DNA of 64,000 bases from Octopus bimaculoides (lineage: Eukaryota), in contig NC_068997.1 in assembly GCF_001194135.2 (NCBI RefSeq), positions 5,408,616-5,472,615 of the forward strand, read 5' to 3'. The translations under genes and the position numbers were made by a program. The stretch's first letter is position 1; every line of letters begins with the position of its first letter. Below, piece after piece: positions 12,554 to 61,455 of this stretch. The notes under the pieces were generated by a model that saw only the letters and a program-made list of their open reading frames with translations, was not told the origin of the DNA and made no database searches.

Positions 12554-12629
12554 CTGCGACTGCTTGGACAGTGAACTGGCCAAATATTCAGAAGGCAGAG
12601 AGTCTGTATCAGATGCGGTCTTCTTATCT
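12554..12629 (-). CDS. HGS: HGS coding exon 8, post-FYVE linker (DKKTASDTDSLPSEYLASSLSKQSQ)
   Basis: cttcattgcag|A GAT...TCG CAG|gtaagc, 76 nt, phase-compatible with exon 7. Aligns to human ELPPEYLTSPLSQQSQ. The downstream UIM exon was not found in 1-12553. Confidence 0.93.
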
Positions 12630-14779
12630 CTGCAATGAAGAAAGAGAATGAATCTATCAGAGGTGGCTTCATCATACAAACAGAACTGTAGTAAAAATAA
12701 ATAAATGAATAAATAAATAAAAATGCAGTAAGGGAAATAATTTAAAGAGGTAAAAGGTATAAATTTGGACAAATGAGTCAGTACTGTGTGTCATATGCAA
12801 AATATTTTCAGCTAAAATTTACCACTTAGTTGGAGAAAAAATTTTTTAATGGCAATTGGAAACTACACTCCTAAAAGAGGAAATGATTTTAAAAAAAAAT
12901 TAATTTCTCAGTTATTTTATACACGTTATGAAGAGGTCCCTTTTGTCAGGTTGAGGACAAAAAAAAGCAACACCTCTCTAGGGCTGATGCCACAAAAACA
13001 AAAACAAAAAAGCATTGAGTATACTTCATAAAACATTGTTAGGAAAGAGCATCTAGCCACAGAAACCAAGGCAAAACTGAAATGAAATGAGATGAAATCA
13101 TCTGACCTATCCAGGTGAGCAGTACCCATGAATATGTGCTGACTTCCATGATGACAACCCATCAAACCCATGCCAGCCTGGGAACTAGATGTATAATGAC
13201 AATGATATTGGGAAAGTCTGAACTTTGTTTGAAGGCAAGGGACAATTAAGGAAATGTCTCAGTCTATTAGGTTTCATTGGCACAGTATATACTTTATGAT
13301 GTATAAACTATAGCATATAATTACTTCAAAACTGCTCGATTAGTTGACAGAGATTCTTACATAAAAGAAAGTAATATTTTTTTTTAGTATAATTTGCATA
13401 ATTAAACCATGAGCCAGGTGAAATTATTCAAACGAGCCAATGGCATGAATATGGATAAGTTAAAGAGTGATGCATTGAATGCAATGTGCAAAAATTTTAA
13501 TTAATTATAATACCTTTGTTGTTAGTGACCTCTAAACAAACTGGGCAATGATTTCAAGGAATTAGGAATTAATCTCTCAAAGTTCAATTATACATACTTA
13601 GAGGAAGGAAAGTATAAGCCTTGTTTGCTGGCAAAGGTGACAATTATGAAAAATTCCACTGCAAAAGAGTGACTTGCTCAAGGACAAAATGTACCACTCA
13701 ATGTAAAAATCAAACTCACAACCTCTCAATTCTAAGCCCAATACCTCAACCATTGGGTCACACATTATCATTTGCAGGACAATCAACAGTAAATATAGCC
13801 AAGAGTTTATTAACTAATTTATAAAGCAGAGTTCTTGACTGATTGACTGACACAGAAACAGTACAGTGCATAAAATACATAAAATGTAATACATAAAATA
13901 TAAAATAGGCAACATTTACAAGTGAACCAGTAGTTGGTAGATATAGCACATGCACACAATTACCATCATTTTCATTTTAACATCCACTTCTCCATGCTTG
14001 AATAGTTAAAACAGAATTCTTTGAGGCAGATTTTCTACAGCTGGCTATCTTTTCTGTTATCAACCATCATCTATTTCAAAGCAAAGTAATGACCAGACAT
14101 GTTTTCCTTGGAAGACTGGAAACAAGGACCACTTGTAGAGGATAGACCAAAAGTCACAAAGAGGTTGCACTCACAAAGATCTGATTGGACAGGGGCTATA
14201 GCAGAAGACATTTGCTCAAGCTGCTGCACTTGACAACCACATTGATGGGAAGCAAGCTGCTTCTGAAACACACAGCCAGGGACAGAGAACATTAAGGTGC
14301 TTACATTCTTGTACACAATATTAAAGCAGAACTTGTGAAGGAATGGAAAAACAAATTGTTCACATTCTGTTACACACACATTTTTTTAACCACAGAAAAC
14401 ATGCATTATAACATGCTACATTCTGGTACTGGTGTAACATAAACAGCATCCAGTACACACAGGGGAGTGGTTGGTGTTAGAAAGAACACCCAGCTGTAAA
14501 AAACATACCAGAACAGACAATGGAGCCTGGTGCAACCCCTGGCCTTATCAGCTCTGGTCAAACCATCCAATCCATACCAGCATGGAAAACAGACATTAAA
14601 TGAGGATGATGATTCCCCCAATTGTTGTATTTATTTCTACAAATCTTGAATATAGAGGTTCAGAAATACCGAAATGACTATTATTGTGATACTGCTCATT
14701 ACAATACAGGAATTGTTATCATCATAAATTTTATGTTCTTTTCTTTGCTTGGATGGGTTGGACAGATCTTCTCCAGCAC

Positions 14780-15030
14780 AGTAGCCCAACACTTATCACA
14801 GTTACTCATCTCCTCCATGAAGTCAAATCTGACATCCGTGCTCACCATTGTTGCTCATGTTATCCCAGGTCTTTCTCTTCTGCAGTGCCAGCTGGGTCAA
14901 GAAGTACCAAGTGGCTCAAGTGGATCACTTGGCACTTCTTTACCCAACTATCATTCATCATGCACATCATACATCCACTCCAGTGCAGTTTCTTCTCTCG
15001 TACACTACAACTGATTTCTCATGCATCTAG
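14780..15030 (-). mobile_element. Highly decayed RTE LINE tail
   Basis: Resembles the 22636-22830 tail (ggtaaagaagtgcc...agaaagacctggg...gtgctggagaag on the minus strand). Confidence 0.5.
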
Positions 15031-15594
15031 TTTGTCTCAGTTTATTTGTACTCTGTTGTTCATGCACACTAACATTACACATGCACCCAGTAACATATAC
15101 ACAGTAAAGTATACTGGGTGTTGGAAAGGCATCCAACCATAGAAACCATATCAAAAAAGGAATGTATGAGTAACTACAAATCAGAACCATCTTGGACCAT
15201 GACAACATATCCAATCCAAGCTAATATGGAACACTATAAAATGATATGAGAGTATTCTATAGAGCATATCACAGAAAACCTCTCCACTGTTAGACCAGTA
15301 CTTCATTTGACTGACTGGTACTTGATTTTTTTCAGAAGAATGGAATGCAAAGTTGATCTTGTGTGAATTTTGCACTCAGAACATAAAGAGCTGAAACTAA
15401 ATACTGCAAGACATTTTTATCTGTTTATAATGATTCTGCAAATTTACCACTTTGTTTGAAAAAATTGTTTGAAATTAAAATGATGTCCTCATTCCTTAAA
15501 TTTTCTCTCACTTACACCACTAGGTTTAGAATCCATAGCTTCAGCAGACAGCTTTTACAAACAAAAAGGAAAGAAGATGAAAAGGAGAGCTTAC

Positions 15595-15716
15595 TTGAGT
15601 TTATCAAAGCAAGAATCACAGACTCGCACTTCACGTTCTATCCCAAAGCGAGGAATGGTTGATACTTTTGAAGAGCATTTACTACACATTACTTCTCCAC
15701 AGTTGCGGCAATGGTG
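15595..15716 (-). CDS. HGS: HGS coding exon 7, FYVE core ([41 protein letters not shown])
   Basis: ttttttctag|CAC CAT TGC CGC...CTC AA|gtaagc, 122 nt. Completes the RKHHCR and RVC motifs and the 8 Zn-binding cysteines. Confidence 0.97.
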
Positions 15717-16281
15717 CTAGAAAAAAACAAAATAGAACTAAAAAGTCTGCTGTCACAGTTTTCATTATATAATTACTTTTCATTGATTATAATTAAATTA
15801 AATCATTACGAATATGATTTGTATTTTTTTCTTTTTAATAACTTTTCTCACATGCAAGATTAGTAATTGGAACAAATGCATCAAAAGAAAAAGAAATTTT
15901 TTCCACATCTTATGCATGTTACAGAAAAACAGTTAAATAGAGAGAAGTCCATAATTTGTAACTAATCACTGGTGCTATGCTGTGTCTATGGCCAGAACAT
16001 TTAACTTTCAAATAGCAGGTTAATAACATTTTAAATTTAGGAAGTACTATAAAAGAGATGTAGTATCTATGGAGCACTGCTGCATGAATAAAATATAGAT
16101 TCTATGGAGCACTATTATGTAGAGTCTAGGATGTACTATGGGTGAGATAGCATGTAGGGTGGTCATGGATAATATGCAGTCCTTTTGACTTCCTGTATGA
16201 AACAATTTCCTGATAATACTAACAAAACTTTTTCCAGAGTTGTTTGCTAAAATAGTCAAATCAAATATGAGTAAATACATT

Positions 16282-17124
16282 GGTGTGGCCTGAATTATGA
16301 GGATCAATACCTTGTGTGGTCTGAATTATGAGGATCAATACCTTGTGTGGCCTGAATTATGAGGATCAATACCTTGTGTGGCCTGAATTATGAGGATCAA
16401 GNNNNNNNNNNNNNNNNNNNNNNNNNNNNNNNNNNNNNNNNNNNNNNNNNNNNNNNNNNNNNNNNNNNNNNNNNNNNNNNNNNNNNNNNNNNNNNNNNNN
16501 NNNNNNNNNNNNNNNNNNNNNNNNNNNNNNNNNNNNNNNNNNNNNNNNNNNNNNNNNNNNNNNNNNNNNNNNNNNNNNNNNNNNNNNNNNNNNNNNNNNN
16601 NNNNNNNNNNNNNNNNNNNNNNNNNNNNNNNNNNNNNNNNNNNNNNNNNNNNNNNNNNNNNNNNNNNNNNNNNNNNNNNNNNNNNNNNNNNNNNNNNNNN
16701 NNNNNNNNNNNNNNNNNNNNNNNNNNNNNNNNNNNNNNNNNNNNNNNNNNNNNNNNNNNNNNNNNNNNNNNNNNNNNNNNNNNNNNNNNNNNNNNNNNNN
16801 NNNNNNNNNNNNNNNNNNNNNNNNNNNNNNNNNNNNNNNNNNNNCTGAATTATGAGGATCAATACCTTGTGTGGCCTGAATTATGAGGATCAATACCTTG
16901 TGTGGTCTGAATTATGAGGATCAATACCTTGTGTGGCCTGAATTATGAGGATCAATACCTTGTGTGGTCTGAATTATGAGGATCAATACCTTGTGTGGTC
17001 TGAATTATGAGGATCAATACCTTGTGTGGCCTGAATTATGAGGATCAATACCTTGTGTGGCCTGAATTATGAGGATCAAGACCTTGTGTGGCCTGAATTA
17101 TGAGGATCAATACCTTGTGTGGTC
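16282..17124. repeat. 31-bp minisatellite (ctgaattatgaggatcaataccttgtgtggY)n spanning a gap
   Basis: Unit starts at 16290, 16321 and 16352. About 4 copies lie before and 9 after the N run 16402-16844. Confidence 0.97.
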
Positions 17125-17204
17125 TGCTGGTCAAACAAAGTTGCCCATATCTGGGTATTGAGTGATATAGCATCTGGAAGGCACTCTCAATGAGATGAAG
17201 AATG

Positions 17205-17395
17205 TGGGTGAGATATAGGGTCTACAAGGTACTATGGGTGAACTGTTGGGTTTATAAGTACTATGGATGAGATATAGGGTCTACAAGATACTATGGACAA
17301 GATTTAGGGTCTATAAGGTATTATGGATGAGCTGTGGGGTCCTATAAAAGTACTATAGACAAGATGTAGGGTTTATGAGGTATATGGATGAGACA
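17205..17395. repeat. Degenerate ~30-bp tandem repeat (gatatagggtctacaaggtactatgg-like)
   Basis: About 6 diverged copies; related units occur at about 16050-16170. Confidence 0.7.
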
Positions 17396-18286
17396 TAAAC
17401 CCTTAAAGGTGATGGATTAAAAGAGTTAAGGAACAACTACTCAAAAATCAGTGAATATGTATGAATAACATTTGTTGCTCATCCAAAGTTTCATGTTAAG
17501 AGAGAGAATGATTTATTCATTGGGGCAAATTCTTTTTTTACAGTTTAGGCATCAGTCCCTTCTTGCCACTAACCACTCAACTCTGAAGTAGGGTTTCTTT
17601 GTTTTGTTTCAATAACTCAGAGTGAGGTGCTATTTCTCAGAGGCACGGCACAATGTGCCATAGATATGAACATATATGGTCAGTTGTCCAACACAATCAG
17701 TGCTTAAATCATTTGCACAGGAGAAACAATCAGCTTTTCAATCTTGGATCTGTTACACAGTGTGTATGTTGTTCAGTATTATAAGGAGATGATGGGGTAT
17801 AGCAATCTTATAGGGTAAGTGGTATTGAAGTGAGAAGCACTAGGGTGATACACTGTTATAGGAAAGGGTGCAGTGGGGTAATACTGTGTTTCAGGGTATA
17901 AGGTACTGAGTGGTGCTACTGCATAGACATTATAGGATGGATGGTATTGTGGTGATGTTATAGAGTAGATATTAATGTGGTAGTAGTATTATAGGGTAGA
18001 TAATACTGGAGATGAAGTATGAAACTGACCGAAAAACTTTGGGATTCATCATTTCTGTTTTAATATCCACTTTTCAAAGCTTGCATAGGTTGAACAGAAT
18101 TTGTTAAGATAGATTTTCTATAACTGGATACCCTTCCTGTTGCAAACCCTCACTTGTTTTCAAGAAAGATATTTCCCCATGGCGGAACATGTTTTCACAG
18201 AAGATTGGAAATGAAGGGGACTGTTTGAATGATTGATGGTGACACTCATTTACAGCAATTATGCAATGTTAAGAGAAGTAGACACC

Positions 18287-18341
<55 letters not shown>

Positions 18342-18522
18342 CATGCAGTGGGACTGATCTCAGAACCAAGTGTTTTGAAAGCAAGCTTGTTAACCACACA
18401 ACTATGCCTATTTCTTGTATAAAATAGAAAATGCTACTCCAGGTCCCACCCCACCCTAAAAAAAGAGACCTATATAAACCAATGCAGGAAAAAAAAATGA
18501 AATAAAGCCAAAATAAACGTAC

Positions 18523-18644
18523 CTTTCTTTGAACAACACTGAATCCCACACGGCAACGAGTACAACACTCACCATCTTTCCATTCTGGTGCCTTTTCTGC
18601 CACAAACATTGCATCAGCTTCTTTTAAAGCAGGAAACGTATAAC
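18523..18644 (-). CDS. HGS: HGS coding exon 6, linker and start of FYVE (YTFPALKEADAMFVAEKAPEWKDGECCTRCRVGFSVVQRK)
   Basis: cattgtag|GT TAT...AGA AAG|gtacgt, 122 nt. Aligns to human FPEFKESDAMFAAERAPDWVDAEECHRCRVQFGVMTRK; lies inside ORF 18259..18660. Confidence 0.97.
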
Positions 18645-18789
18645 CTACAATGTAAGACAATTTAATGTGATGTGTAGTTAGTAAAATTACTTCATTAACT
18701 TAAAACTTTGTAGCTGAAAATGGTAATTGCTTTGTGATATTTAATGAACTAACAAGGTTATTTTTCCACATTGACGGGGAAATTGATGC

Positions 18790-19330
18790 TTCACTTCATG
18801 CTCTTGCTTGATGAAGCTGGGGTCATCCCAAGTCAGTGGTCCCAGAGATTTTCTTATCGATAGAGCTGACTGGGTCCACCAGTGATGTCCATCAATAGCA
18901 GTCCCATGTCAGTCCCTCTGCATCCTCCGAGGTGACATTGAGCTTCTGGTGATCTTCCCCAATCACATCCAACCATCTGGTCCATGGCCTGCCACGAGGC
19001 CTCTTCCAGACCACAGCTTTTGTATCAAATGAGAATAAAGTCCTTGTAGGATGATCTAGCATGAGACAGAGGACATGTCCATACCAGTGCTATGAGGTGG
19101 GTGGCTATGGGCTGATGTGTGCACACATGCATTTCTTTGTTGGAAACATGATGGTACCATCTGATGTTCTTGATGGTTTTCAGGGCTCTGCTATCAAAGT
19201 TACCAAATCTCTGTTTATTCAAGGAATTGAAGCAAGGTTGTTTATTTTTGGAGAGTGATATCTGATAGAGCCAATAAGGTGCAGGACTACCAACCAAAAG
19301 ATCAGTGGTTCGTGTCACATTCCCAATACA
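18790..19330 (-). mobile_element. Degenerate RTE-like LINE 3' fragment
   Basis: Minus strand reads WYGHV...KRPRGRPWTRWLDVIGED. Confidence 0.7.
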
Positions 19331-19921
19331 GTATAAATAACTAAGACACCTTTTTGTTCTGCCTAATTTTGTATAATTAGTAGGATTAATAGAGGAAAAT
19401 ACCTTTAACCCTAACATTCTCCAAGTCTTTCTAGGATGAAAGATAGGGATAATTGATTGTAGAGTGAAATTAGTGTAGTTAATACCTAATCAGAACTTTT
19501 GTGAAGGTCTGAAGGCGACATCTGTGAAAAGAGTGGCGGCTGAAGGGGACATTTGTGAATAGTTAGTCAGGTTTTGGTGATAAGAGGATGACAAGAGGAA
19601 TTGCAATGATTTGTTTTTCTTTGTAAAAAATGTGAGGTGGGAAAGGGGCAGTGTCCATGACCTTTGTATGGTGATGTGACCACATTCACAGACTGGTGAG
19701 GCTAATATGACTGATGAATAACTTGAACATTTATAGGTCACAATGTTCAAAGGAAAAGTGAGGTTCAATGAGAGAATTCCAGAGAGTTGCAATTCCAAAG
19801 AGGAAGGTCTGAGAAGTAATGTATGAATTGAGTGGGTTAAAGTTGGTTTGTTCAGTAGATGAAGATTAACACAAAATAACTAGATGATGATGGCATTGAA
19901 GATGTCAAAATAATGACTCAC

Positions 19922-20042
19922 CCTCCATTTTCATTAAATGGTATGTGTCTTGCACTGCTTTGTAGCTGGGTTCATTGCGGAAAGCATGTGACCATACCTG
20001 GATCAGTTCCAATATTTTCTCTTTGACAGGGGGTGGTCTTGT
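19922..20042 (-). CDS. HGS: HGS coding exon 5, end of VHS (TRPPPVKEKILELIQVWSHAFRNEPSYKAVQDTYHLMKME-G)
   Basis: ttctttccag|ACA...GAG G|gtgagt, 121 nt. Aligns to human KILYLIQAWAHAFRNEPKYKVVQDTYQIMKVEG. Confidence 0.96.
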
Positions 20043-21068
20043 CTGGAAAGAATGAACAGAACATACAGAGAACAGTGAAATACTTTCCTATCTATAATGA
20101 AAATGCATTATTATAGATTATTACAGGTTATTACAGACTGGCAGTAGCATTGCTACAAATTCTTACAGGCTGGCTATAGCATTGTTACAGGTTATGATAG
20201 ATGGACAGTAGCATGGTTACAAGTATTACACACTGACAGTGCATGGATGTGAGTGTGTGATGTCTATGCATGTGTACATGTGTGGGCTGACATGTGGGTG
20301 AGGGATGATGGTATTAGCTTGATGCATATGTGCATGTTGTAGGGGAAGCATACGTATGGGTGCAGGTGTGTATCAGCCATGTGTGAATACTCCAGTGCAC
20401 AGACCTGCAGGTGTATACATCAACTGTGTATATCAGCTGCATGTGGTTGGTTGTATGAGCATGCGTGTGAATACATGTGCATTAGTGCCTGCTGTATATG
20501 TGTGTGAATGTGTTTAGGATGCATGTATAGGTACATGTGCATATGGATGATTGATGAACACAAGTATATACATTCTTTTATTTGTATGTGAACATATGTA
20601 TGTGTTTGTTTGGAAGAACATACATACATGTGTGAACATATATATGCATGCTTTTGATACTTGTGTGTGTGAGCATGATAGATATATGCTGGAGTTTGTG
20701 TATCTCTTCATTCAATAAAACAAGCCTGAATGAGCTATGTTTCTGAAAATCTAAGATGCATGGAGCTGAAGCAAACAGTTTTAAATAAGATGCAACTCCT
20801 ACTAAATGTGTTAAATGCCTTTTCTTCCATATGTCCACTCACTTGTATATCACCATCATTTAACATTCATTCTCCATCCTGGTAGTGCTCGTTTGATAGT
20901 TATTTTATTGACCCCAGAGGGATGAAAGGCAAAGATGATCGCAGCAGAATTTGAACATAGAAAATATGCTTAGTATTTATTCCGGCTCTTTGTTTTAACA
21001 CTAAGAATTCTGCTAGTTCACCACCTTCACAAGTATGAAGCAATACTAAGCAAACTAGAAAGCAATAC

Positions 21069-21161
21069 CTTGACTTGTTCCTTCAGAAACTCCATGAACT
21101 CTTTGGAAGCAACTTCTTGGTGAATCAATGAGGAGCAATTCTTTACACAGGACTCCAGTGT
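21069..21161 (-). CDS. HGS: HGS coding exon 4, VHS domain (TLESCVKNCSSLIHQEVASKEFMEFLKEQVK)
   Basis: ctgttacag|ACA...AAG|gtattg, 93 nt. Contains the VHS motif LEsCVKNC. Confidence 0.96.
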
Positions 21162-21360
21162 CTGTAACAGAAAACAAAACCTTTTATTTCACATCATTGA
21201 TAGGATTACATATGGAATTGAACTCAATTCTTGCTCTTTAGTGTCATACATACACAATATGCACATGATGAATGTTGCCAAAATGCAAATAAGCGCACAC
21301 ATGCTCAAACACACACTCAGACAAATATTGCGAAAATACAAATATGCACACATATGCACA

Positions 21361-21694
21361 AAGAAGCATGTCTTCAAAGGAACAAAGCCATCAACAGGGG
21401 AAATGACAGCAATGTCACCACTTGCAGCTGGCTGATTTTCGGTGAAGCTCAAATGTCAACGCACGCACGCACGCACAATTTGAAACCTTAACACAGTTTA
21501 GATGATCAATAAGTAACAATCAATAACTGAAATCTCTTTATAAACACAATATGGACATTTTACAAAATAGAAAAAAGCGTGCGTGCGTGCGTTTGTTAAC
21601 ATTTGAGCTTCACCGAAAATCAGCCAGCTGCAAGTGGTGACATTGCTGTCATTTCCCCTGTTGATGGCTTTGTTCCTTTGAAGACATGCTTCTT
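21361..21694. repeat. Perfect 96-bp inverted repeat with 142-bp spacer in HGS intron 3
   Basis: 21361-21456 is the exact reverse complement of 21599-21694. (gcac)n/(gtgc)n tracts extend the pairing inward. Confidence 0.95.
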
Positions 21695-22635
21695 AAGAAG
21701 CATTATAAGGTATGTTTCTTTCCCCTACTCTTTTCCCATCTTGCAAGTTGCTTGGTGACCTCACTCGTGCCAGGAGCATGAGAATGACAAAAGCACCCAG
21801 TACACACTGTGAAATGATTGGTGTCAGGAGGGGTATCCAGCCATAGAAACCATATCAGAGCAGACATTGGAATGAGATGCAACTCTGCAGCCTACCAAAT
21901 CCTGTCAAACCATCCAACCTATGCAATCATGAGAAACAGATGCAAAACGGTGATAATGATGATGGTTAATACCATGAAGGTTATCCAGCTGTAAAACACT
22001 ATCACAATAATGTGTATCTGACCCATGTTAATAAAGGAAAACGGACATAAAAACAAATATCTATAAATTAATTGTGAAATTTTATTTCACTAGCATTATA
22101 ATATTGATATAAACAATGTTAATGTAACAAGCTATTGTAGAGTGTAGTGGGCGCTTTTACGTGCCACCAGCATAAAGGTCAGTCAGGCAGTACTGGCAAC
22201 GGCCACGTTCAAAATGGTGTATTTTACGTGCCACCTACACAGGAGCCAGTCCAGTGGCACTGACAACGATCTCGCTCGAATGTCTTTATACATGCCACTG
22301 GCACAAGTGTCAGGAAGGCGACACTGGGTACAGGTGCCATCATGATTTCGCTTTTGCTTGCTCCAACAGGTCTTCGCAAACCGAGTTTAGTGTCCAATGA
22401 AGGAGACGACGTTGGCATGGGTGCCAGCCGATGAATTAAGTTCAATTTCAATTTCANNNNNNNNNNNNNNNNNNNNNNNNNNNNNNNNNNNNNNNNNNNN
22501 NNNNNNNNNNNNNNNNNNNNNNNNNNNNNNNNNNNNNNNNNNNNNNNNNNNNNNNNNNNNNNNNNNNNNNNNNNNNNNNNNNNNNNNNNNNNNNNNNNNN
22601 NNNNNNNNNNNNNNNNNNNNNNNNNNNNNNNNNNN

Positions 22636-23215
22636 GCACAGCATATTTCCATAGGTCTTGGTCAGAAGTCATCGCCTCGGTGAGGCCCAATGTTTGAAGG
22701 TCGTGCCTCACCACCTCATTCCAGGTCTTCCTGGGCCTACCTCTTCCACAGGTTCCCTCAACTGCTAGGATGTGACACTTTTTCACACAGCTATCCTCAT
22801 CCATTCTCGCCACATGACCATACCAGCGCAATCATCTCTCCTGCACACCACAACTGATGCTTCTTAGGTTCAACTTTTCTCTCAAGGTACTTACACTCTG
22901 TCTAGTATGCACACTGACACTACACACCCATCGGAGCATACTGGCTTCATTCCTTGCGAGCCTACGCCATGTAGCATGTTTCACTGCCATGTAGCATAGC
23001 TGTTCGTACACATGCGTCATACAGTCTGCCTTTTACTCTGAGTGAGAGGCCCCTTGTCACCAGCAGAGGTAAGAGCTCTCTGAACTTTGCCCAGGCTATT
23101 CTTATTCTAGCAGCTACACTTTCAGCGCACCCTCCCCTACTACTAACTTGGTCACCTAGATAGCAGAAGCTATCAACTACATCTAGTTTTTCTCCCTGGA
23201 ATGTGGCCAAAGTTG
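22636..23215 (-). mobile_element. RTE-clade LINE 3' fragment
   Basis: Frameshifted ORFs with FCYLG, RIAWAKFREL, LHGSET, RWYGHVARM and GRGRPRKTW. Confidence 0.92.
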
Positions 23216-23601
23216 TTTTCTGCACATTTTCAGTGTTTATTGCTCCTGAACATCTGCATCTATGACAACATAATATCTAGTTTAGAGTCTTGTCTTGCAA
23301 GTTACTTGGTGACCTTACAAGTGCTGGTTCCATATGCAAAGCACCCAGTACACTCTGTAAAGTGGTCAGTATTAAGAAGGGCATCCATCTGTAGAAACTA
23401 CACCAAAGCTGACATTGAGGTTTGGTGCAGTCCTCTGGCTTACTGGCTCCTCTCCAACAGGAAGAAAAAATAGGTGTTAAATGATGATGACATTGCCTTG
23501 CCTTAGGCCATCATCTCTGGATGGCATGGTAGGGACAGCACAACCATGTCTTGGGTATTTGAAATACTAGTCAACTCACCAGATCTGGCCACAGTTGATT
23601 T

Positions 23602-23636
<35 letters not shown>

Positions 23637-24273
23637 CATGTGCGAGTGCGAGTGCGTGAGAGATGTCAACACTAGTGCTTGACTGATATTTTATTCACTC
23701 TGAGAGGATGAAAGGCAGAATTGATACTGACAGGATCTGAACTGAGAGCCTACAAAGATTGAATATTGCAAAGTACTTTCTGATATTCTATTAACCAATT
23801 CACTCTGAGGCAATGATAAGTGACAGAGACCCTTGGAGATATGCTGTGCTGGAGAAGACCCAGGAAGCCAAGTGAGACCATAACCGTGGCCTATGCCAGT
23901 GCTGTATAACCAGCCCATTTAAGAGTACCCTTCAATCATTGGACAATAAACTATGCTTGCGAAGACCTGCTAAGGCAAGTGAAATCGCTGTTGAGGCTGA
24001 TGACAGTACCGCCTGATTGGCACCCGTGCCAGTGGAATGTTAGCACCATTTGAGCATGGCCGATGCCAGTCCCACCTGACTGGCCCTCGTGCTGGTGGCA
24101 CGTAAAAGCACCCACTACAATCACGGAGTGGTTGGTGTTAGGAAGGGCATCCAACTGTAGAAACTTTGTCAGATAAGATTGGAGCCTGGTGCAGCCCTTA
24201 GTCAAAGCGTCCAACCCGTACCAGCATGGAAAGCGGACGTTAAACGATGATGATGAATTCACTATCATACATA

Positions 24274-24305
<32 letters not shown>

Positions 24306-24366
24306 AATGTATATANNNNNNNNNNNNNNNNNNNNNNNNNNNNNNNNNNNNNNNNNNNNNNNNNNN

Positions 24367-24410
<44 letters not shown>

Positions 24411-24963
24411 ATCATCATCTTTTAATCTCCGCTTTCCATGCTGGCATGGGTTGGACGGTTTAAAAACTGAAGGAAGGATTCTTGTGAAACACTGGACTCA
24501 AGAGTTCTCTGATGTTACCAGTCTTTTACTGGTCAACATAAAGAATAGATAACACAATGTTGTGTCAATCAGGTGGGCCACATCAGCAATTTTGATTTGT
24601 TGACACTTGCCTCAATAGGTCTTCACAAGTAAAGTTCATTGTCCAATGAATGAGGGGTACTCATAAGTAGGCCGGTTACACCCCACGTTCGGATGTACTT
24701 TTAATGTTCCACTGGCACAAGTGCCAATCAGTGGTACTGTCATTGGCCACATCAGCAATTTTGATATATATTCATATATTCCAACAAAGTTGATTTTGCC
24801 TTTCAACATTTTGGGGTCAAATGTAATTGACTAGCCCTATATGTCAAAATTTCAGGTGTTGCAACTGTAGCAGAAAGAATACACACATACACATATATCT
24901 ATTTATAGTTGGCAAAGCTAAAAATCAAAATCAAACAATAATGAAAATTATCAACAAAGTTAC

Positions 24964-25039
24964 CTGGAGTGCAAACATTGCAACATGAGGATTATCAACA
25001 GCTAATTTCTTCTTGATTGCAGTCAGGGCATATTTGGGT
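24964..25039 (-). CDS. HGS: HGS coding exon 3, VHS domain (PKYALTAIKKKLAVDNPHVAMFALQ)
   Basis: ttgttttccag|A CCC...CTC CAG|gtaact, 76 nt. Phases match both neighbours; aligns to human AKYAVNSIKKKVNDKNPHVALYALE. Confidence 0.95.
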
Positions 25040-26147
25040 CTGGAAAACAAAAAGAAAAAGAAATGTTTAACAGACCACCACATTCTAAAAATAAAAACTC
25101 AATAGTTGGATCTAACAGCAGAAAAATAATTTTCACAAATCAGCCATACCTAGTCACATTAAATTGCTTTAGTCTCAGGAAAACTCCAGCCTTTTACATT
25201 TTACTTCAGTTTATCATTTTCATGAAATTTGTAAATGTATCGTTCACCAAAAGTAATATTTTTATAATTAAACATTAGGAACTGTATTAAAAAATTGTTA
25301 AATATCTTGTGTAGTGTAGAAGTATAACAAATTTATTGCACATAAACTTTAACAAAATCTCATATGTACCCTCAAAGGTCATATGGACCCCAGTTGAAAA
25401 CCACTGATTCACATCAAAGCTGCATTACATTCTATAGGCACGGACATGACTGTCTGGTTAAGAAGTTTGCTTCCCAACACGATTTTGGGTTCAGCCCTGC
25501 AGCATGGCACTTTGGGTATGTGTCTTCTGTTATAGTCCTGGGCTAAACAAAGTGTTGAGAGTAGATTTGGTAGATGGAAATTGAAAGCCCATTGTGTATA
25601 TCAATGTGTATGTGTGTGTGCACATTGTGTACATGTGTGTGAAATCTGAATGTCACTCTTTTTCTTGACATAGCATAATAGTTGAAATAAGCATCATTGC
25701 CACACAAACAGTATCATCCATTTCCAATATTTTGCAAAACCATGCCATGGAGAAATATTACCTAGGTTGGAAACAGGTATGGTTTGGTGATAGAAAGGAA
25801 CATACAGTTGTGAAAACTCTGCTTCAACTAAGTGGGACAATCCATGCAAGCACAGAAAAGTTGACATTAATGATGATGATGAACTTAAAGGTGGTGGATT
25901 TAGCTATCTTGGGACTGAACAGAGTCTAACAATAGCTGAACTTGTTATTGTTCAGTTGCAGATCAGACGTTCTCATTAACCTCACTTTTAACCAAAACTC
26001 ATCACAGCAAGACTAGATATAGTTACATCTTTTTATCCTTTATTTATTTCAGTCGCTGTACTGAGTCCATGCTGGGACACTGCCTTGAGTTTTAGTTGAA
26101 CAAATGGACCCCAGTATTTATGTAAATAAAAACATGTCAACACTTAC

Positions 26148-26232
26148 TGTACATCTCCCTGTCTGATGCAGTCACAGATACCTAAAATAGAGTCCCAGTC
26201 TGGTTCTAATAGTAGCTGGCTTGTTGCTTTCT
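26148..26232 (-). CDS. HGS: HGS coding exon 2, VHS domain (EKATSQLLLEPDWDSILGICDCIRQGDVQ)
   Basis: ttctattacag|AG...GTA CA|gtaagt, 85 nt. Near-identical to human DKATSQLLLETDWESILQICDLIRQGDTQ. Confidence 0.96.
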
Positions 26233-27176
26233 CTGTAATAGAAGAAAGAAAATAATTAGAGAGAGAGAGAGAGAGAGAGATAAATTTAAGATTTCAAACC
26301 TTTACCTAGATTTCATAGAACCAACTGCATAGGAAGAGGACAACACTTAGTGTGTATGTTTGTGTAAGAATACCTTTTGAAGAATGCAGCCAAGTTAAGG
26401 CTGATTGTATGAAACATGCATAAATTTGAAATCCCAACACATACACATTTTTAGTACAACCATGTATTCAGTGCTAATTGATTTCCTACAATACACACAA
26501 AAAGAGACCTGATATTTGCTAATGATCTCAGTTGCATTTCCATGACAATGTGTTGAACAGGTCTATAAATTTACATATTTTATAATAAATTATTGGAGAT
26601 GCATTCTTTTGGTACTTTCTTTCCAAACCAATTGTGAACAAGATGATAGTGTAGAGAAAGCTATAACATCACCCTTTCTTACACATACTCTTTACTCTTT
26701 TACTTGTTTCAGTCATTTGACTGTGGTCATACTGGAGCACTGCCTTTAGTTGAGCAAATTGACCCCAGAACTTATTCTTTGTAAGCCTCTTTTGCCGAAC
26801 CGCTAGGTTACGGGGACATAAACACACCAGCATTGGTTGTCAAGCGATGTTGGGGGGACAAACATATATACATATCTATGATGGGCTTCTTTCAGTTTCC
26901 GTCTACCAAATCCACTCACAAAGCTTTGGTCGGCCCGAGGCTATAGTAGAAGACACTTGCCCAAGGTGCCATGCAGTCGGACTGAACCCAGAACCATGCT
27001 ACAAACTTATATAAAATAAAATATACGTATTTTGATTACAGTGAAAGGAACTAAAATTACTTAATACCACAATAAAGTGTAAATTTATTGAGGATAATCC
27101 AACAGCTTGAAATTTGGATCAGCTTCATAATCCATATANNNNNNNNNNNATATATATATATATATATATATATATA

Positions 27177-52868: not shown

Positions 52869-52905
52869 CAAGAGCTTTATCGTATTGGGAGTTCCGGCCG
52901 AACAT
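52869..52905 (-). CDS. HGS: HGS/Hrs coding exon 1 (MFGRNSQYDKAL-E)
   Basis: Minus strand ATG TTC GGC CGG AAC TCC CAA TAC GAT AAA GCT CTT G|gtaaga: 37 nt, phase 1, joining in frame to the AG-AAA-GCA-ACA exon at 26232. Equivalent to human MGRGSGTFERLL-D. Confidence 0.88.
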
Positions 52906-53647: not shown

Positions 53648-53708
53648 ATGTGTTTATTAATTGGACCACCCGGAGTTGGTAAAACTTTACTCATGAAGAG
53701 GATGCAAA
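53648..53708 (+). CDS. ARL16: ARL16 coding exon 1 (MCLLIGPPGVGKTLLMKRMQ), P-loop
   Basis: ATG at 53648, GxxGxGKT motif. Matches human MCLLLGATGVGKTLLVKRLQ; followed by donor GTATCCTTT. Confidence 0.95.
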
Positions 53709-55745
53709 GTATCCTTTGAAATAGTCTACTGTTGCTAACTGTGTGGTGTCGCTATCTGTGTGTGTGTGTGTGTGTTATTAATTCTATATTTCTTAATATA
53801 TGTCAGTGTGAGTGTAGTGTGATAATTTTGTGGGTGTGTTACCCGTAACTATGTGAGTGTGACTGTGTTTTGGTCTGTGAGTGTATGGCTAATTGTACGT
53901 GTTAATAACTACATGTGTGTAGTTATTAACACTTAAAAATGCAAGTATGTATGTGCATGCATATGTGTGTGTACATATATATGCATGCGTGTGTGTACAT
54001 GTACATATATATAGATAGATAGATAGATATGCGTGTTTATGAATGTATGTGTGTGTATAAACTGTGTGCGATTTTTCGAAATGGTCTTCCCTCCTCAATC
54101 ACCTGTTTTTTTCAAAGGTTCGTACTTTTATTCGTCCCCCCCCCCACCGTTCTTTCAACCACTGACTTACTTGCAATACAATAAAAAATAACCCACAGTT
54201 AAGGATCTCAACAGCAATTACTCTGATAATATATAATACACAGCTTTTATTACACGTCCCTGGAGGCAGGTTTTCTGTCTGTTTAAGCAGATGTTTTCTC
54301 CAAAAAATGCACTTTCAATCTTTGTGCAATCTTTAATAATTGCCATTCAAATGGATCGGATTTATTATTGTTTGGGTCATTATAAGCTTATATTCGTCTC
54401 CGGGTCATTTTCTGGTTGTTTAACTCTGGGTCAACTCTCAGTTAAAGTAAGACCACAAACATTGTATTTATGAGCATCCTGACTTATTATACCAGGGATA
54501 ATATTTTCCGTTGCATCTTTTTTTTTTTTTTTTTCCATCTTTCATTGGAGATGGTAGGACGCAGTTTGGGGACATTTGGCTGTTGTTTCTGTCCCATCAA
54601 ACGACAGTATAATGATATAAATCACGAGAATTATTGGTGACTAATGATAGTTTTTGTTAACGTTATTATTGTTTTAACACTTTCATCATCCTATTAATAA
54701 AATACTTCTTGTTTCTCTCTTTCTTATTTTCTCATTTCTTTCTTCTTGTCAGTTATTTTCTAATATTTGGTGTACAGCACAACTAAATTGTAAACCTAAC
54801 AAATGTGCTTTGACCTACCTAGAAATAACAGCCTATTTTTCCTCAAATAAAAGTCGTCTACCTGAAAAAAAAAAAAAAAAACGAGATGAGGGCAGACTAC
54901 GCGGCAACTCGATTAACCAGAAATAACAGTCAAATCTCCAGTACTTATAAGCAACAGAAAGAAACACTGGATAATGTAGTCCTAAATTTTACAATGTCTG
55001 AAAATAAATAAAAGATATAGTGGTCCCAGCAGGAACGTTTTTAATTATCCGCTTACTTGATGGATGCTGGCCAGGGGTTAAACAATAACGCAACCACCAA
55101 AACAACCGGCAACAATTCACGCTAAATCTCTGTTCTCTATATATGTTCTAGTGTGAAAAGGGGGGACACTGGACTGTAAAAGCTCTGGACACTGTTTCAT
55201 CAACCGGGAAATTAATATCAAAGTAATTACAAGAGAAAAAGAAAAGAAAAAATAGAAAAGGAAACAGCTAATGTGGACAGGCCCTCTTAACAGGATGATC
55301 GGATGGCCTGTTGTTAGAAATGCCACTTGAACTCGCCTAAATCTAATCGATATATTTACTGAAATTAATTAATTATTGGGATGGGGGAGAAGGATGCCTA
55401 CGCTCACTTTCTGTCTGAAAAACAAATACTTCTAACATCCTTCATGTAGTGAGGTGAAAAATCTGAATAATTCAAATTTACATTAATTGTGAAACAAAAA
55501 AAATAATCATTAACTAAAAGGTATATGACAAGGTAGGGGAGACAACCCCAGAATTTAAATTCTTTTTGCTAACTCAACTATCAGATGTCCTTATACATCA
55601 CTACTCAATGGATTTCCTCATAAAATATAGAGAACTAGATGTCTTTTAATGAAATTTTTTTTAGTTGTGGCTTATTTTAATACAATATTTATGTGTACAT
55701 TTTATGTGCTTACAAATATGTTTGTTAATTCCTTAATAAATTTTG
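53709..55745 (+). other. ARL16: U12-type (minor spliceosome) intron, ARL16 intron 1
   Basis: 5' splice site GTATCCTTT (53709-53717) is the U12 consensus. Branch-site motif TTCCTTAAT at 55729-55737 lies just before exon 2. Confidence 0.85.
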
Positions 55746-55804
55746 ATTGTACAAGTAAAGGTACTTTTGAAAACCTCCATGAAATTCCAGCAACTATTCC
55801 AACA
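55746..55804 (+). CDS. ARL16: ARL16 coding exon 2 ((N)CTSKGTFENLHEIPATIPT); 5' boundary 55746 or 55761
   Basis: Ends ACA|gtaaga in phase 0. Aligns to human GDLGEPPPTRPT. The acceptor is ambiguous (see the U12 finding). Confidence 0.8.
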
Positions 55805-56847: not shown

Positions 56848-56927
<80 letters not shown>

Positions 56928-56940
56928 TATTCTTTCCTAG

Positions 56941-57060
56941 GTGGGTACAAATATGGTCAGTGTATTATTAAGCAAAAAAATAGACATTGTTATACGAGAA
57001 CTTGGAGGTTGCATGGGACCAATTTGGCACAGTTATTTCAGAGACACAGAATATCTTATG
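56941..57060 (+). CDS. ARL16: ARL16 coding exon 3 (VGTNMVSVLLSKKIDIVIRELGGCMGPIWHSYFRDTEYLM)
   Basis: tctttcctag|GTG...ATG|gtatgt, 120 nt. Contains the ARL16-diagnostic IRELGGCMGPIW. Confidence 0.97.
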
Positions 57061-59323: not shown

Positions 59324-59439
59324 TATATGATAGATTTAAACAACAGACAGCAAATCTCAGCTGCATGTATACAGTTGCTGACCATTTTACAAGACAAACA
59401 ACTGACCAATACACCTGTCCTTCTTCTTCTGAACAAAAT
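59324..59439 (+). CDS. ARL16: ARL16 coding exon 4 (YMIDLNNRQQISAACIQLLTILQDKQLTNTPVLLLLNK-I)
   Basis: ttgtgtttcag|TAT...AAA AT|gtaagt, 116 nt. Begins the NKxD motif. Confidence 0.95.
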
Positions 59440-60276: not shown

Positions 60277-60445
60277 AGACATGGCTACTATAATGTCAAG
60301 GCCAGAATTTGAAAACTACCTTCGCTTGGAAGAAATAATTCAGTATTCCACCCAAAATATTACAGTCCACGAAATAAGTGCCTGGAATGGTAAAGGATTG
60401 GAAGAGATTCTTCGTTGGCTTCAGGCTAATTACAAGCCCAGATGA
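60277..60445 (+). CDS. ARL16: ARL16 coding exon 5 to stop (DMATIMSRPEFENYLRLEEIIQYSTQNITVHEISAWNGKGLEEILRWLQANYKPR*)
   Basis: ctcttttttatag|A GAC...AGA TGA. Matches human QNITTAEISAREGTGLAGVLAWLQ. The exons total 525 nt with the 59-nt exon 2. Confidence 0.96.
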
Positions 60446-61455
60446 AACACGCCCCTTCTTATTGCATGTTCTTCTATCTACAGTTTCAACTCTTGTAATA
60501 TTTATTTGTCCATGAGTTCATTGTTGCATTTGTCCAACCCTGCTAAAGAGAAAAAATAATAATGAATAACTAAATATGCCACACCAAATTTTTTTTTCAT
60601 TTTATGAGAAATATGTATTCTCTCTTCACATAAAGGTCCCTAAGTAAAGAATAATGGTGCCACCAAAAGCTGCTCTATTTTGTGGAAGGCTCCCATCTGA
60701 AGGCATTGGCTTCCAATGGGTCTACCTAAAAGGATCAAGAAGTATGGTTAGCATCAGTGTTCCGTCACTCCCAGCGGTCTTGGAGGTCATGGGTGCTGAC
60801 TGTTCTTCTTTCACTAGGCCATTAAAAGGAAAGAAAAAGTATTAAAAAAGTGTATTTTTTGATATTATGAATTTATAAAAGGTGAATGGATAAAAAATGT
60901 GTGAGAATTATTACTTTTGACATTTGTATCAGATATGAGGAGGAAATCTGTGGGCCCTTTGTAATGTCAAGGGTAACATGTTTGTCTGGCAAGCAAAAGG
61001 TATGTGGTTCAATTTCATGCTGTGGATTTATTGTTACTTTTGCTCTCAGATTGTTGTTTACAAACTTTAAATGTGCATAATTTAAAACATAGCTTTTAAT
61101 ATTAATCTATTTGCATGTGTGTGCATGTGAGTGCCATAAAAAAACAAGACAGTGGAGAAAAGGGATTGACTGGACTTTGGTTTCCCACCCCACCTCATTG
61201 TGTGTGTGTATATATATATATAAACATGTACATATAAACATCAATATATATCATCATGATCTGTATTGATCAGATGGAATTTATTGTGGTAGTTTTCTAC
61301 ATTCAGATGCCCTTCTTGTCACCAACTCTCACCTGTTTCCAAGCCAGGTTATTTTCCCATACCTAGATATGTTTTCACAGAAGACTGGAAATGAACAACC
61401 TCACTTGCATGACAATGATGTTCATTTACAACCACTGCATGGTGTCTAGGTAAGG

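What the first reader, a model, noticed from the sequence alone, without database searches (positions are those of the whole stretch)
53709..55760. Minor-spliceosome intron in ARL16 with a probable non-canonical GT-TG boundary
Seen: donor GTATCCTTT and branch motif TTCCTTAAT (55729-55737) are the U12 consensus; exon 1 ends in phase 1. There are three candidate acceptors. (a) TG at 55744-55745, 9-10 nt from the branch A, gives a 59-nt exon whose 20 residues match human EVSSRDGKGDLGEPPPTRPT in length without a gap. (b) AG at 55754-55755 is at a normal U12 distance but frameshifts to a TAA in exon 3. (c) AG at 55759-55760 is in frame but about 25 nt from the branch and deletes 5 residues. Established: U12 3' sites are set largely by branch-point distance and tolerate unusual terminal dinucleotides. 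Inference: a rare GT-TG U12 intron, with the competing AG giving an NMD isoform that could tune ARL16 level.
Basis: partly seen in the sequence, partly recalled or inferred. Interest (0 to 1): 0.75.

Follow-up and report, generated by a model that had tools for sequence, protein, structure and literature searches.

The report
Octopus ARL16 minor intron ending TG
The first intron of the octopus ARL16 gene is an ancient minor-spliceosome (U12-type) intron that very probably ends in TG instead of AG. This is a rare but already catalogued variant, and it has misled three of the four octopod genome annotations compared here.

Summary
The window is Octopus bimaculoides chromosome DNA. It carries a five-exon ARL16 gene, head-to-head with HGS.

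Intron 1 (53709-55745) starts with a perfect U12 donor, GTATCCTTT. It has a perfect U12 branch motif, TTCCTTAAT, 8 nt before a TG.

Evidence for the TG boundary:
- The 174-aa protein it gives is letter-for-letter the RefSeq ARL16 of O. bimaculoides and O. sinensis.
- The T at -2 is present in four independent octopod assemblies.
- Cuttlefish RNA-seq contigs (all ten read, of 43 runs indexed) carry the homologous 15 nt in the mRNA.
- All 14 variable sites of exon 2 among Octopus, Argonauta and Sepia are third-codon positions, and 20 of 20 residues are identical.
- AT-AC introns of a hemichordate and a starfish end at the same homologous base.

The AG at 55759-60 (the older 169-aa model) would delete five conserved residues and lies 24-25 nt from the branch A.

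The NMD-tuning idea has no support: both downstream AGs sit inside conserved codons, also in species with AT-AC introns.

GT-TG minor introns are known (about 0.04% of conserved animal minor introns). This is a correct, modestly interesting new member of a known kind. No octopus junction reads were examined here.

The parts
53648..53708 (+). ARL16 exon 1 coding part (MCLLIGPPGVGKTLLMKRMQ plus 1 nt, phase 1)
   Evidence: Sequence and translation; tblastn to human-like ARL16; exact RefSeq protein match.
53709..53717 (+). U12-type 5' splice site GTATCCTTT
   Evidence: only match in the window. Conserved as GTATCCTTT in O. sinensis and Argonauta hians. The O. vulgaris locus fetched here starts inside the intron and does not cover the donor.
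53709..55745 (+). Intron 1, 2037 nt, U12-type with GT-TG termini
   Evidence: Follows from the exact RefSeq protein match, because no other junction gives ...CAAA|ATTGT.... Orthologous U12 introns are seen.
55729..55737 (+). U12 branch-point sequence TTCCTTAAT (branch A at 55735 or 55736)
   Evidence: Identical 9-mer in Argonauta within an otherwise unalignable intron.
55744..55745 (+). Non-canonical 3' terminal dinucleotide TG
   Evidence: The same T is present in O. sinensis, O. vulgaris and A. hians.
55746..55804 (+). Exon 2, 59 nt (with the carried A: NCTSKGTFENLHEIPATIPT)
   Evidence: 20 of 20 residues are identical in Argonauta and Sepia, and all 14 variable sites are third-codon positions.
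55754..55755 (+). Downstream AG inside the Ser codon AGT; if used it gives a frameshift and a TAA in exon 3
55759..55760 (+). Downstream AG spanning the Lys-Gly codons; if used it gives the in-frame 169-aa form of the older annotation
   Evidence: UniRef A0A0L8HRR5.
56941..57060 (+). Exon 3 (120 nt, phase 0-0), flanked by ordinary AG and GTATGT
59324..59439 (+). Exon 4 (116 nt), with donor GTAAGT
   Evidence: The exon end was corrected from 59438 to 59439 by recounting the sequence printed, after the translation failed downstream of exon 4. The corrected model was not re-translated, but its total length fits the RefSeq gene end.
60277..60445 (+). Exon 5 coding part, including the TGA stop
   Evidence: The gene end matches the RefSeq gene range in L013.

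Best explanation
Intron 1 of Octopus bimaculoides ARL16 (53709-55745) is an ancient minor-spliceosome (U12-type) intron.

- Inferred from the consensus: U11 and U6atac recognise the donor GTATCCTTT, and U12 snRNA pairs with TTCCTTAAT.
- Inferred mechanism: the 3' splice site is chosen mainly by its short distance from the branch A. The first G in range, G55745 preceded by T, is therefore used, although real AGs lie 10 and 15 nt further on. The terminal G keeps the first-G/last-G combination of GT-AG introns, and only the -2 base differs.
- Inferred history: other molluscs have GT-AG at this intron, so the octopod state is most simply an A-to-T change at -2 that the minor spliceosome tolerated. 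The junction therefore did not move, and the five conserved residues CTSKG were kept.

What is shown: the motifs, the coordinates, the identity of the protein with RefSeq, cross-species conservation, and cuttlefish mRNA content.

What is inferred: actual use of the junction in octopus RNA, and dependence on the minor spliceosome.
For: - The donor and branch motifs each match the consensus 9 of 9 and sit at the homology edges.
- The TG-variant protein equals XP_014769920.1 (O. bimaculoides) and XP_029647029.1 (O. sinensis), with no 'low quality' flag. The window is 100% identical to the O. bimaculoides chromosome assembly.
- The same ...TTCCTTAAT aaattttg|ATTGT is present in O. sinensis and O. 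vulgaris. Argonauta hians has TTCCTTAAT ataactg|ATTGC.
- All ten Sepia esculenta RNA-seq contigs read (of 24 fetched; the index lists the protein in 43 runs) read CAAA|ACTGTACAAGCAAAGGAACT, which is the long form.
- Exon 2 has 14 of 14 variable sites at codon position 3, including 6 of 6 in the first seven codons (the disputed 15 nt plus the next two codons). The 8-nt spacer just upstream has diverged and carries an indel.
- Ptychodera and Patiria have AT-AC introns in phase 1 whose exon 2 starts ATTGT/ATTAT at the same homologous base, encoding H/N-C/Y-S-N/S-K-G.
- GT-TG is a recorded minor-intron subtype.
- U12 3' site choice depends on distance, and non-canonical termini are tolerated.
Against: - No octopus RNA reads were seen here. 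The RefSeq models could in principle rest on protein homology.
- The cuttlefish genome was not available, so its acceptor could be AG.
- The branch-A-to-3'-end distance is 9-10 nt (8-9 in Argonauta). That is shorter than the 11-14 nt of all seven other orthologues examined, and below the quoted optimum of 11-13.
- An older O. bimaculoides annotation chose AG 55760.
Confidence: 0.87

Rival explanations
1. The productive junction uses the canonical AG at 55759-60 (GT-AG, 169-aa protein), and the 15 nt before it are intronic.
For: - It is in frame.
- It was chosen by the first O. bimaculoides annotation, UniRef A0A0L8HRR5.
- The Argonauta annotation also uses this AG.
Against: - It deletes CTSKG, which is conserved from cephalopods to hemichordates and echinoderms.
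- The 15 nt show only synonymous third-position changes in the TG frame.
- The site lies 24-25 nt from the branch A, beyond the other orthologues (11-14 nt) and the optimum of 11-13.
- No polypyrimidine tract precedes it.
- Cuttlefish transcripts and both RefSeq models carry the long form.
Confidence: 0.06
2. Both are used. TG makes the protein-coding mRNA, and slippage to AG 55755 (frameshift, premature stop) or AG 55760 gives minor isoforms. The frameshifted one may be removed by NMD as a regulatory device.
For: - The AG 55755 product has a TAA in exon 3, 204 nt before the last junction as counted, which fits the usual NMD rule.
- U12 3' site selection is described as error-prone.
- Non-canonical sites are often alternative sites.
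Against: - The AGs lie inside conserved codons (AGT/AGC Ser, AAA-GG Lys-Gly). These codons are also present in Patiria and Ptychodera, whose introns end in AC. Coding constraint therefore explains them.
- No short or frameshifted cephalopod form was among the database clusters. The Sepia cluster has a single member, and the only other Sepia form is an exon-3 skip.
- Low-level noise cannot be excluded. A regulatory role has no support.
Confidence: 0.25
3. Base 55744 is an assembly error or rare allele, and the true acceptor is AG.
For: None found.
Against: T is at this position in four independent assemblies: O. bimaculoides, O. sinensis, O. vulgaris and Argonauta hians.
Confidence: 0.01

Closest known systems
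Non-canonical U12-type (minor) introns of the GT-TG subtype
   Same: - U12 consensus donor beginning with G.
- U12 branch motif close to the 3' end, and no polypyrimidine tract.
- The last base is G and the -2 base is T.

The subtype is recorded in mouse (1 case, Sheth 2006). It is listed among human G-type minor introns. It makes up 29 of about 73,700 conserved animal minor introns (Larue and Roy 2023 supplement).
   Different: - This is a new gene and lineage example, in cephalopod ARL16.
- It is shared by two octopod superfamilies.
- Its branch-to-3' distance (8-10 nt) is shorter than in the orthologous canonical introns.
Orthologous ARL16 intron 1 in other animals (human ARL16 is listed as a minor-intron gene)
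   Same: Same gene and same phase 1. In deuterostomes it lies at the same codon position after the P-loop helix (…KRLQ|). It has the U12 donor and branch motifs.
   Different: The termini differ:
- AT-AC in Ptychodera and Patiria.
- GT-AG in Branchiostoma, Potamilus and Babylonia.
- CT-AC in narwhal and a bat.
- GT-TG in octopods.

In the bivalve and the gastropod the intron sits 9 nt further 3'.
TG alternative 3' splice sites of U2-type introns (GNAS, TSPYL2 and others)
   Same: TG serves as a 3' terminal dinucleotide next to canonical AGs.
   Different: Those are major-spliceosome introns in which TG is usually the minor alternative beside a strong AG with a polypyrimidine tract. Here the intron has U12 signals, and TG appears to be the main productive site.

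Membership tests
U12-type (minor-spliceosome) intron | 5' splice site matching /RTATCCTTT | tested here: met
   GTATCCTTT at 53709-53717, 9 of 9. Conserved in O. sinensis and Argonauta.
U12-type (minor-spliceosome) intron | Branch-point sequence TTCCTTRAY close to the 3' end (optimum 11-13 nt) | tested here: met
   TTCCTTAAT at 55729-55737, 9 of 9. The branch A is 9-10 nt from the last intron base, which is on the short side.
U12-type (minor-spliceosome) intron | No distinct polypyrimidine tract before the 3' splice site | tested here: met
   Direct reading of ...gtttgttaaTTCCTTAATaaattttg| shows no long pyrimidine run.
U12-type (minor-spliceosome) intron | Canonical termini GT-AG or AT-AC | tested here: not met
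   The termini are GT-TG. This places the intron in the known non-canonical minority, about 3.8% of animal minor introns. Termini are not the defining feature of the class.
U12-type (minor-spliceosome) intron | Orthologous intron is U12-type in other lineages | tested here: met
   U12 donor and branch motifs were found in 8 other species from 4 phyla. Human ARL16 is named a minor-intron gene.
U12-type (minor-spliceosome) intron | Splicing depends on the U11, U12, U4atac and U6atac snRNPs | not testable with these tools
   This needs snRNA knock-down or a minigene assay.
GT-TG junction actually used in RNA | Transcripts join 53708 to 55746 | tested here: inconclusive
   The evidence is indirect. 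There is an exact match to two RefSeq proteins, and Sepia esculenta transcripts carry the homologous 15 nt. No octopus reads were available.
Alternative splicing coupled to NMD as a regulatory switch | The alternative site is conserved beyond what coding needs, and the isoform is observed | tested here: not met
   The AGs are inside conserved codons that are also present beside AT-AC introns. No such isoform is among the database proteins. The premature-stop geometry alone is met.
ARL16 (Arf-like small GTPase 16) | Arf-family domain and orthology to ARL16 | tested here: met
   PF00025 is precomputed for all hits, the best hits are named ARL16 across animals, and there is an exact RefSeq match.

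The most novel reading that the evidence does not exclude
ARL16 intron 1 is a single orthologous minor intron that shows four different terminal pairs across Bilateria: AT-AC, GT-AG, CT-AC and GT-TG. In cephalopods the TG state, with an unusually short 8-10 nt branch-to-3' distance, may have been held since before octopods and cuttlefish split. If so, it would be a natural model for how the minor spliceosome picks the 3' site by distance while ignoring nearby AGs.
Probability: 0.35. Interest if true: 0.45.

Novelty: new member of a known kind. Interest (0 to 1): 0.35.

Why it matters
It is a clean, phylogenetically supported example of a rare minor-intron subtype, about 4 in 10,000 conserved animal minor introns.

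It shows concretely how such introns break automated annotation. Four octopod genomes carry four different models of this one junction, and only RefSeq gives the conserved protein.

It also offers a natural test case for 3' site choice by distance: TG at 9-10 nt is chosen over AGs at 19-20 and 24-25 nt.

It does not change what is known about splicing or about ARL16 function.

Tried and rejected
- **Assembly error at 55744:** rejected, because four assemblies agree.
- **AG 55760 as the productive site:** rejected on conservation, codon pattern and distance.
- **A shifted junction giving the same mRNA:** none exists. The exon 1 and exon 2 edges share no ambiguity (CAAA|GT versus TG|ATTG).
- **Direct octopus RNA evidence in the Logan-derived protein collection:** none found. 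The 90% cluster holds only four annotated proteins.
- **The cuttlefish genomic acceptor:** not obtainable with these tools.
- **Gigantopelta locus:** not on record.
- **Three primary papers on U12 3' site rules** (PMC86782, PMC1370826, PMC60238): not held. The Turunen review was used instead.
- **Rfam scan of the window:** found nothing related to splicing, only one borderline tRNA-like hit that ARAGORN did not confirm.
- **A-to-I editing creating an AG:** considered and rejected, because the acceptor has no A to edit.

Full report
**What is in the sequence.**
The window matches the Octopus bimaculoides chromosome assembly GCA_001194135.2 at 100% over the 8 kb compared. ARL16 lies on the + strand in five exons:

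| Exon | Coordinates |
|---|---|
| 1 | 53648-53708 |
| 2 | 55746-55804 |
| 3 | 56941-57060 |
| 4 | 59324-59439 |
| 5 | 60277-60445 (with stop) |

The exon 4 end was corrected from 59438 by recounting the sequence. The corrected model was not re-translated, but its total length fits the RefSeq gene end.

Exon 1 is 20 codons plus one A, so the intron is in phase 1. The next bases are GTATCCTTT (53709-53717), the only RTATCCTTT in the window. TTCCTTAAT is at 55729-55737. It is followed by aaattttg, then ATTGTACAAGTAAAGGTACT....

| Acceptor | Exon 2 length | Consequence |
|---|---|---|
| TG 55744-5 | 59 nt | In frame, adds NCTSKG |
| AG 55754-5 | 49 nt | Frameshift, TAA in exon 3 |
| AG 55759-60 | 44 nt | In frame, five residues shorter |

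Each motif alone is expected two to three times by chance in this AT-rich window. Their positions at the two homology edges are what make the observation real.

**Which acceptor is used.**
Five independent lines point to TG.

1. The 174-aa protein built with TG is letter-for-letter RefSeq XP_014769920.1 (O. bimaculoides) and XP_029647029.1 (O. sinensis). Neither is flagged low quality. The exon edges share no sequence ambiguity, so that protein can only come from a GT...TG intron.
2. The T at -2 is present in O. bimaculoides, O. sinensis, O. vulgaris and Argonauta hians. This excludes an assembly error.
3. A cephalopod protein 86% identical is listed in 43 RNA-seq assemblies. Two of those runs are cited in papers on the cuttlefish Sepia esculenta. 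All ten contigs read show ...ATGCAAA|ACTGTACAAGCAAAGGAACT, which is the long form.
4. Exon 2 has 14 variable sites among Octopus, Argonauta and Sepia. All are at the third codon position in the TG frame, and 20 of 20 residues are identical. Six of these sites lie in the first seven codons, that is the disputed 15 nt plus the next two codons. The 8-nt spacer just upstream has diverged and differs by one base in length between Octopus and Argonauta. The boundary between constrained coding sequence and free sequence therefore falls exactly at TG|A.
5. The acorn worm Ptychodera flava and the starfish Patiria miniata have AT-AC U12 introns in the same phase. Their exon 2 starts ATTGT... and ATTAT... 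at the same homologous base, encoding HCSNKGSF and NYSSKGSF.

**Why the AGs are passed over (inferred mechanism).**
Minor-intron 3' sites are chosen largely by distance from the branch point, with an optimum of 11-13 nt. Non-canonical termini are tolerated (review). Distances from the last A of the branch motif are as follows:

| Site or species | Distance from branch A |
|---|---|
| Octopus TG | 9 nt (10 from the first A) |
| Octopus AG 55755 | 19 nt |
| Octopus AG 55760 | 24 nt |
| Argonauta TG | 8 nt |
| Seven other orthologues | 11-14 nt |

TG keeps a G as the last base, as in GT-AG, and only the -2 base differs. A bivalve (Potamilus), a gastropod (Babylonia) and amphioxus have GT-AG here. 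The simplest history is therefore an A-to-T change at -2 in the cephalopod or octopod lineage that left the junction in place. The short distance is the one feature that sits uneasily with the textbook optimum.

**The NMD idea.**
The frameshift product of AG 55755 does meet the usual premature-stop geometry. However, both AGs are parts of conserved codons: Ser AGT/AGC and Lys-Gly AAA-GG. The same AGs occur after the AT-AC introns of Patiria and Ptychodera, where no AG is involved in splicing. No shorter or frameshifted cephalopod form is among the database clusters. Occasional slippage is plausible, because U12 3' choice is described as error-prone. A tuning function has no support.

**Comparison with what is known.**
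GT-TG minor introns are rare but catalogued:
- one in mouse (Sheth et al. 2006);
- listed among human G-type minor introns;
- 29 of about 73,700 conserved animal minor introns, or 0.039% (Larue and Roy 2023 supplement).

Human ARL16 is treated as a minor-intron gene. No paper mentioning this octopus intron was found. It is present only implicitly in the RefSeq models. I therefore file it as a new member of a known kind.

**Annotation lesson.**
The four octopod genomes carry four different models of this junction:
- RefSeq uses GT-TG and gives 174 aa.
- The first O. bimaculoides annotation uses AG 55760 and gives 169 aa.
- O. vulgaris misses exon 1 and starts inside the intron, reading through the branch site (MCLFYVLANMFVNSLINFDCTSKG...).
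- Argonauta hians shifts both boundaries by 15 nt to force GT-AG, which replaces NCTSKG with SILSYS.

**Limits.**
No octopus RNA reads could be examined. The cuttlefish genomic acceptor is unknown. Dependence on the minor spliceosome is inferred from the consensus motifs and from orthology.

Noticed in passing
window 12578-26233 and 52869-52905 (- strand) versus 53648 (+); L001, L011, L013, L017: HGS (Hrs; VHS-FYVE) lies head-to-head with ARL16. The two start codons are about 740 bp apart, and HGS has a first intron of about 26 kb. The same divergent pairing is seen in Argonauta, in narwhal, and on a single Sepia transcript contig that joins both genes about 440 nt apart. This points to a very old shared promoter region, or to a chimeric assembly in the Sepia case.
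   Followed up: partly
L017 (narwhal) and L020 (bat Hipposideros), ARL16 intron 1: Both mammals read ...CAGA|CTATCCTTC ... CCTTGAC ...GCAC|AG. This is a U12-type intron with CT-AC termini, a very rare subtype: 24 of about 73,700 in Larue and Roy 2023, and previously reported for rodent Trappc9. The human sequence was not checked.
   Followed up: partly
L016 (Potamilus) and L019 (Babylonia), ARL16 intron 1: In the bivalve and the gastropod, the U12 GT-AG intron sits three codons (9 nt) further 3' than in cephalopods and deuterostomes, still in phase 1. This is either intron sliding or a 9-nt gain in exon 1.
   Followed up: no
P0073 (O. vulgaris CAI9735382.1), P0001 (A. hians GAB1609348.1), P0072 (UniRef A0A0L8HRR5): These are three mis-modelled ARL16 proteins caused by the TG acceptor. 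One has a missed exon 1 with a start inside the intron. One has both boundaries shifted by 15 nt. One has a 5-residue deletion.
   Followed up: yes
P0003 (Sepia esculenta, 134 aa, 2 contigs): This is an in-frame isoform that skips the 120-nt exon 3, which carries the switch and G3 region (VGTN...ELGGCMGPIW). It would be a GTPase-dead form if translated.
   Followed up: no
window 60955-61027 (+): There is a borderline Rfam tRNA hit (30.4 bits against a gathering score of 29), about 500 nt after the ARL16 stop. ARAGORN finds nothing there. It is probably a tRNA-derived repeat or a pseudo-tRNA.
   Followed up: partly
window 53758-53775 and 56880-56922: Simple repeats lie inside the ARL16 introns: (GT)n early in intron 1, and a long (AT)n run ending about 18 nt before the exon 3 acceptor. 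In Argonauta a long (GAT)n run abuts the branch site.
   Followed up: no
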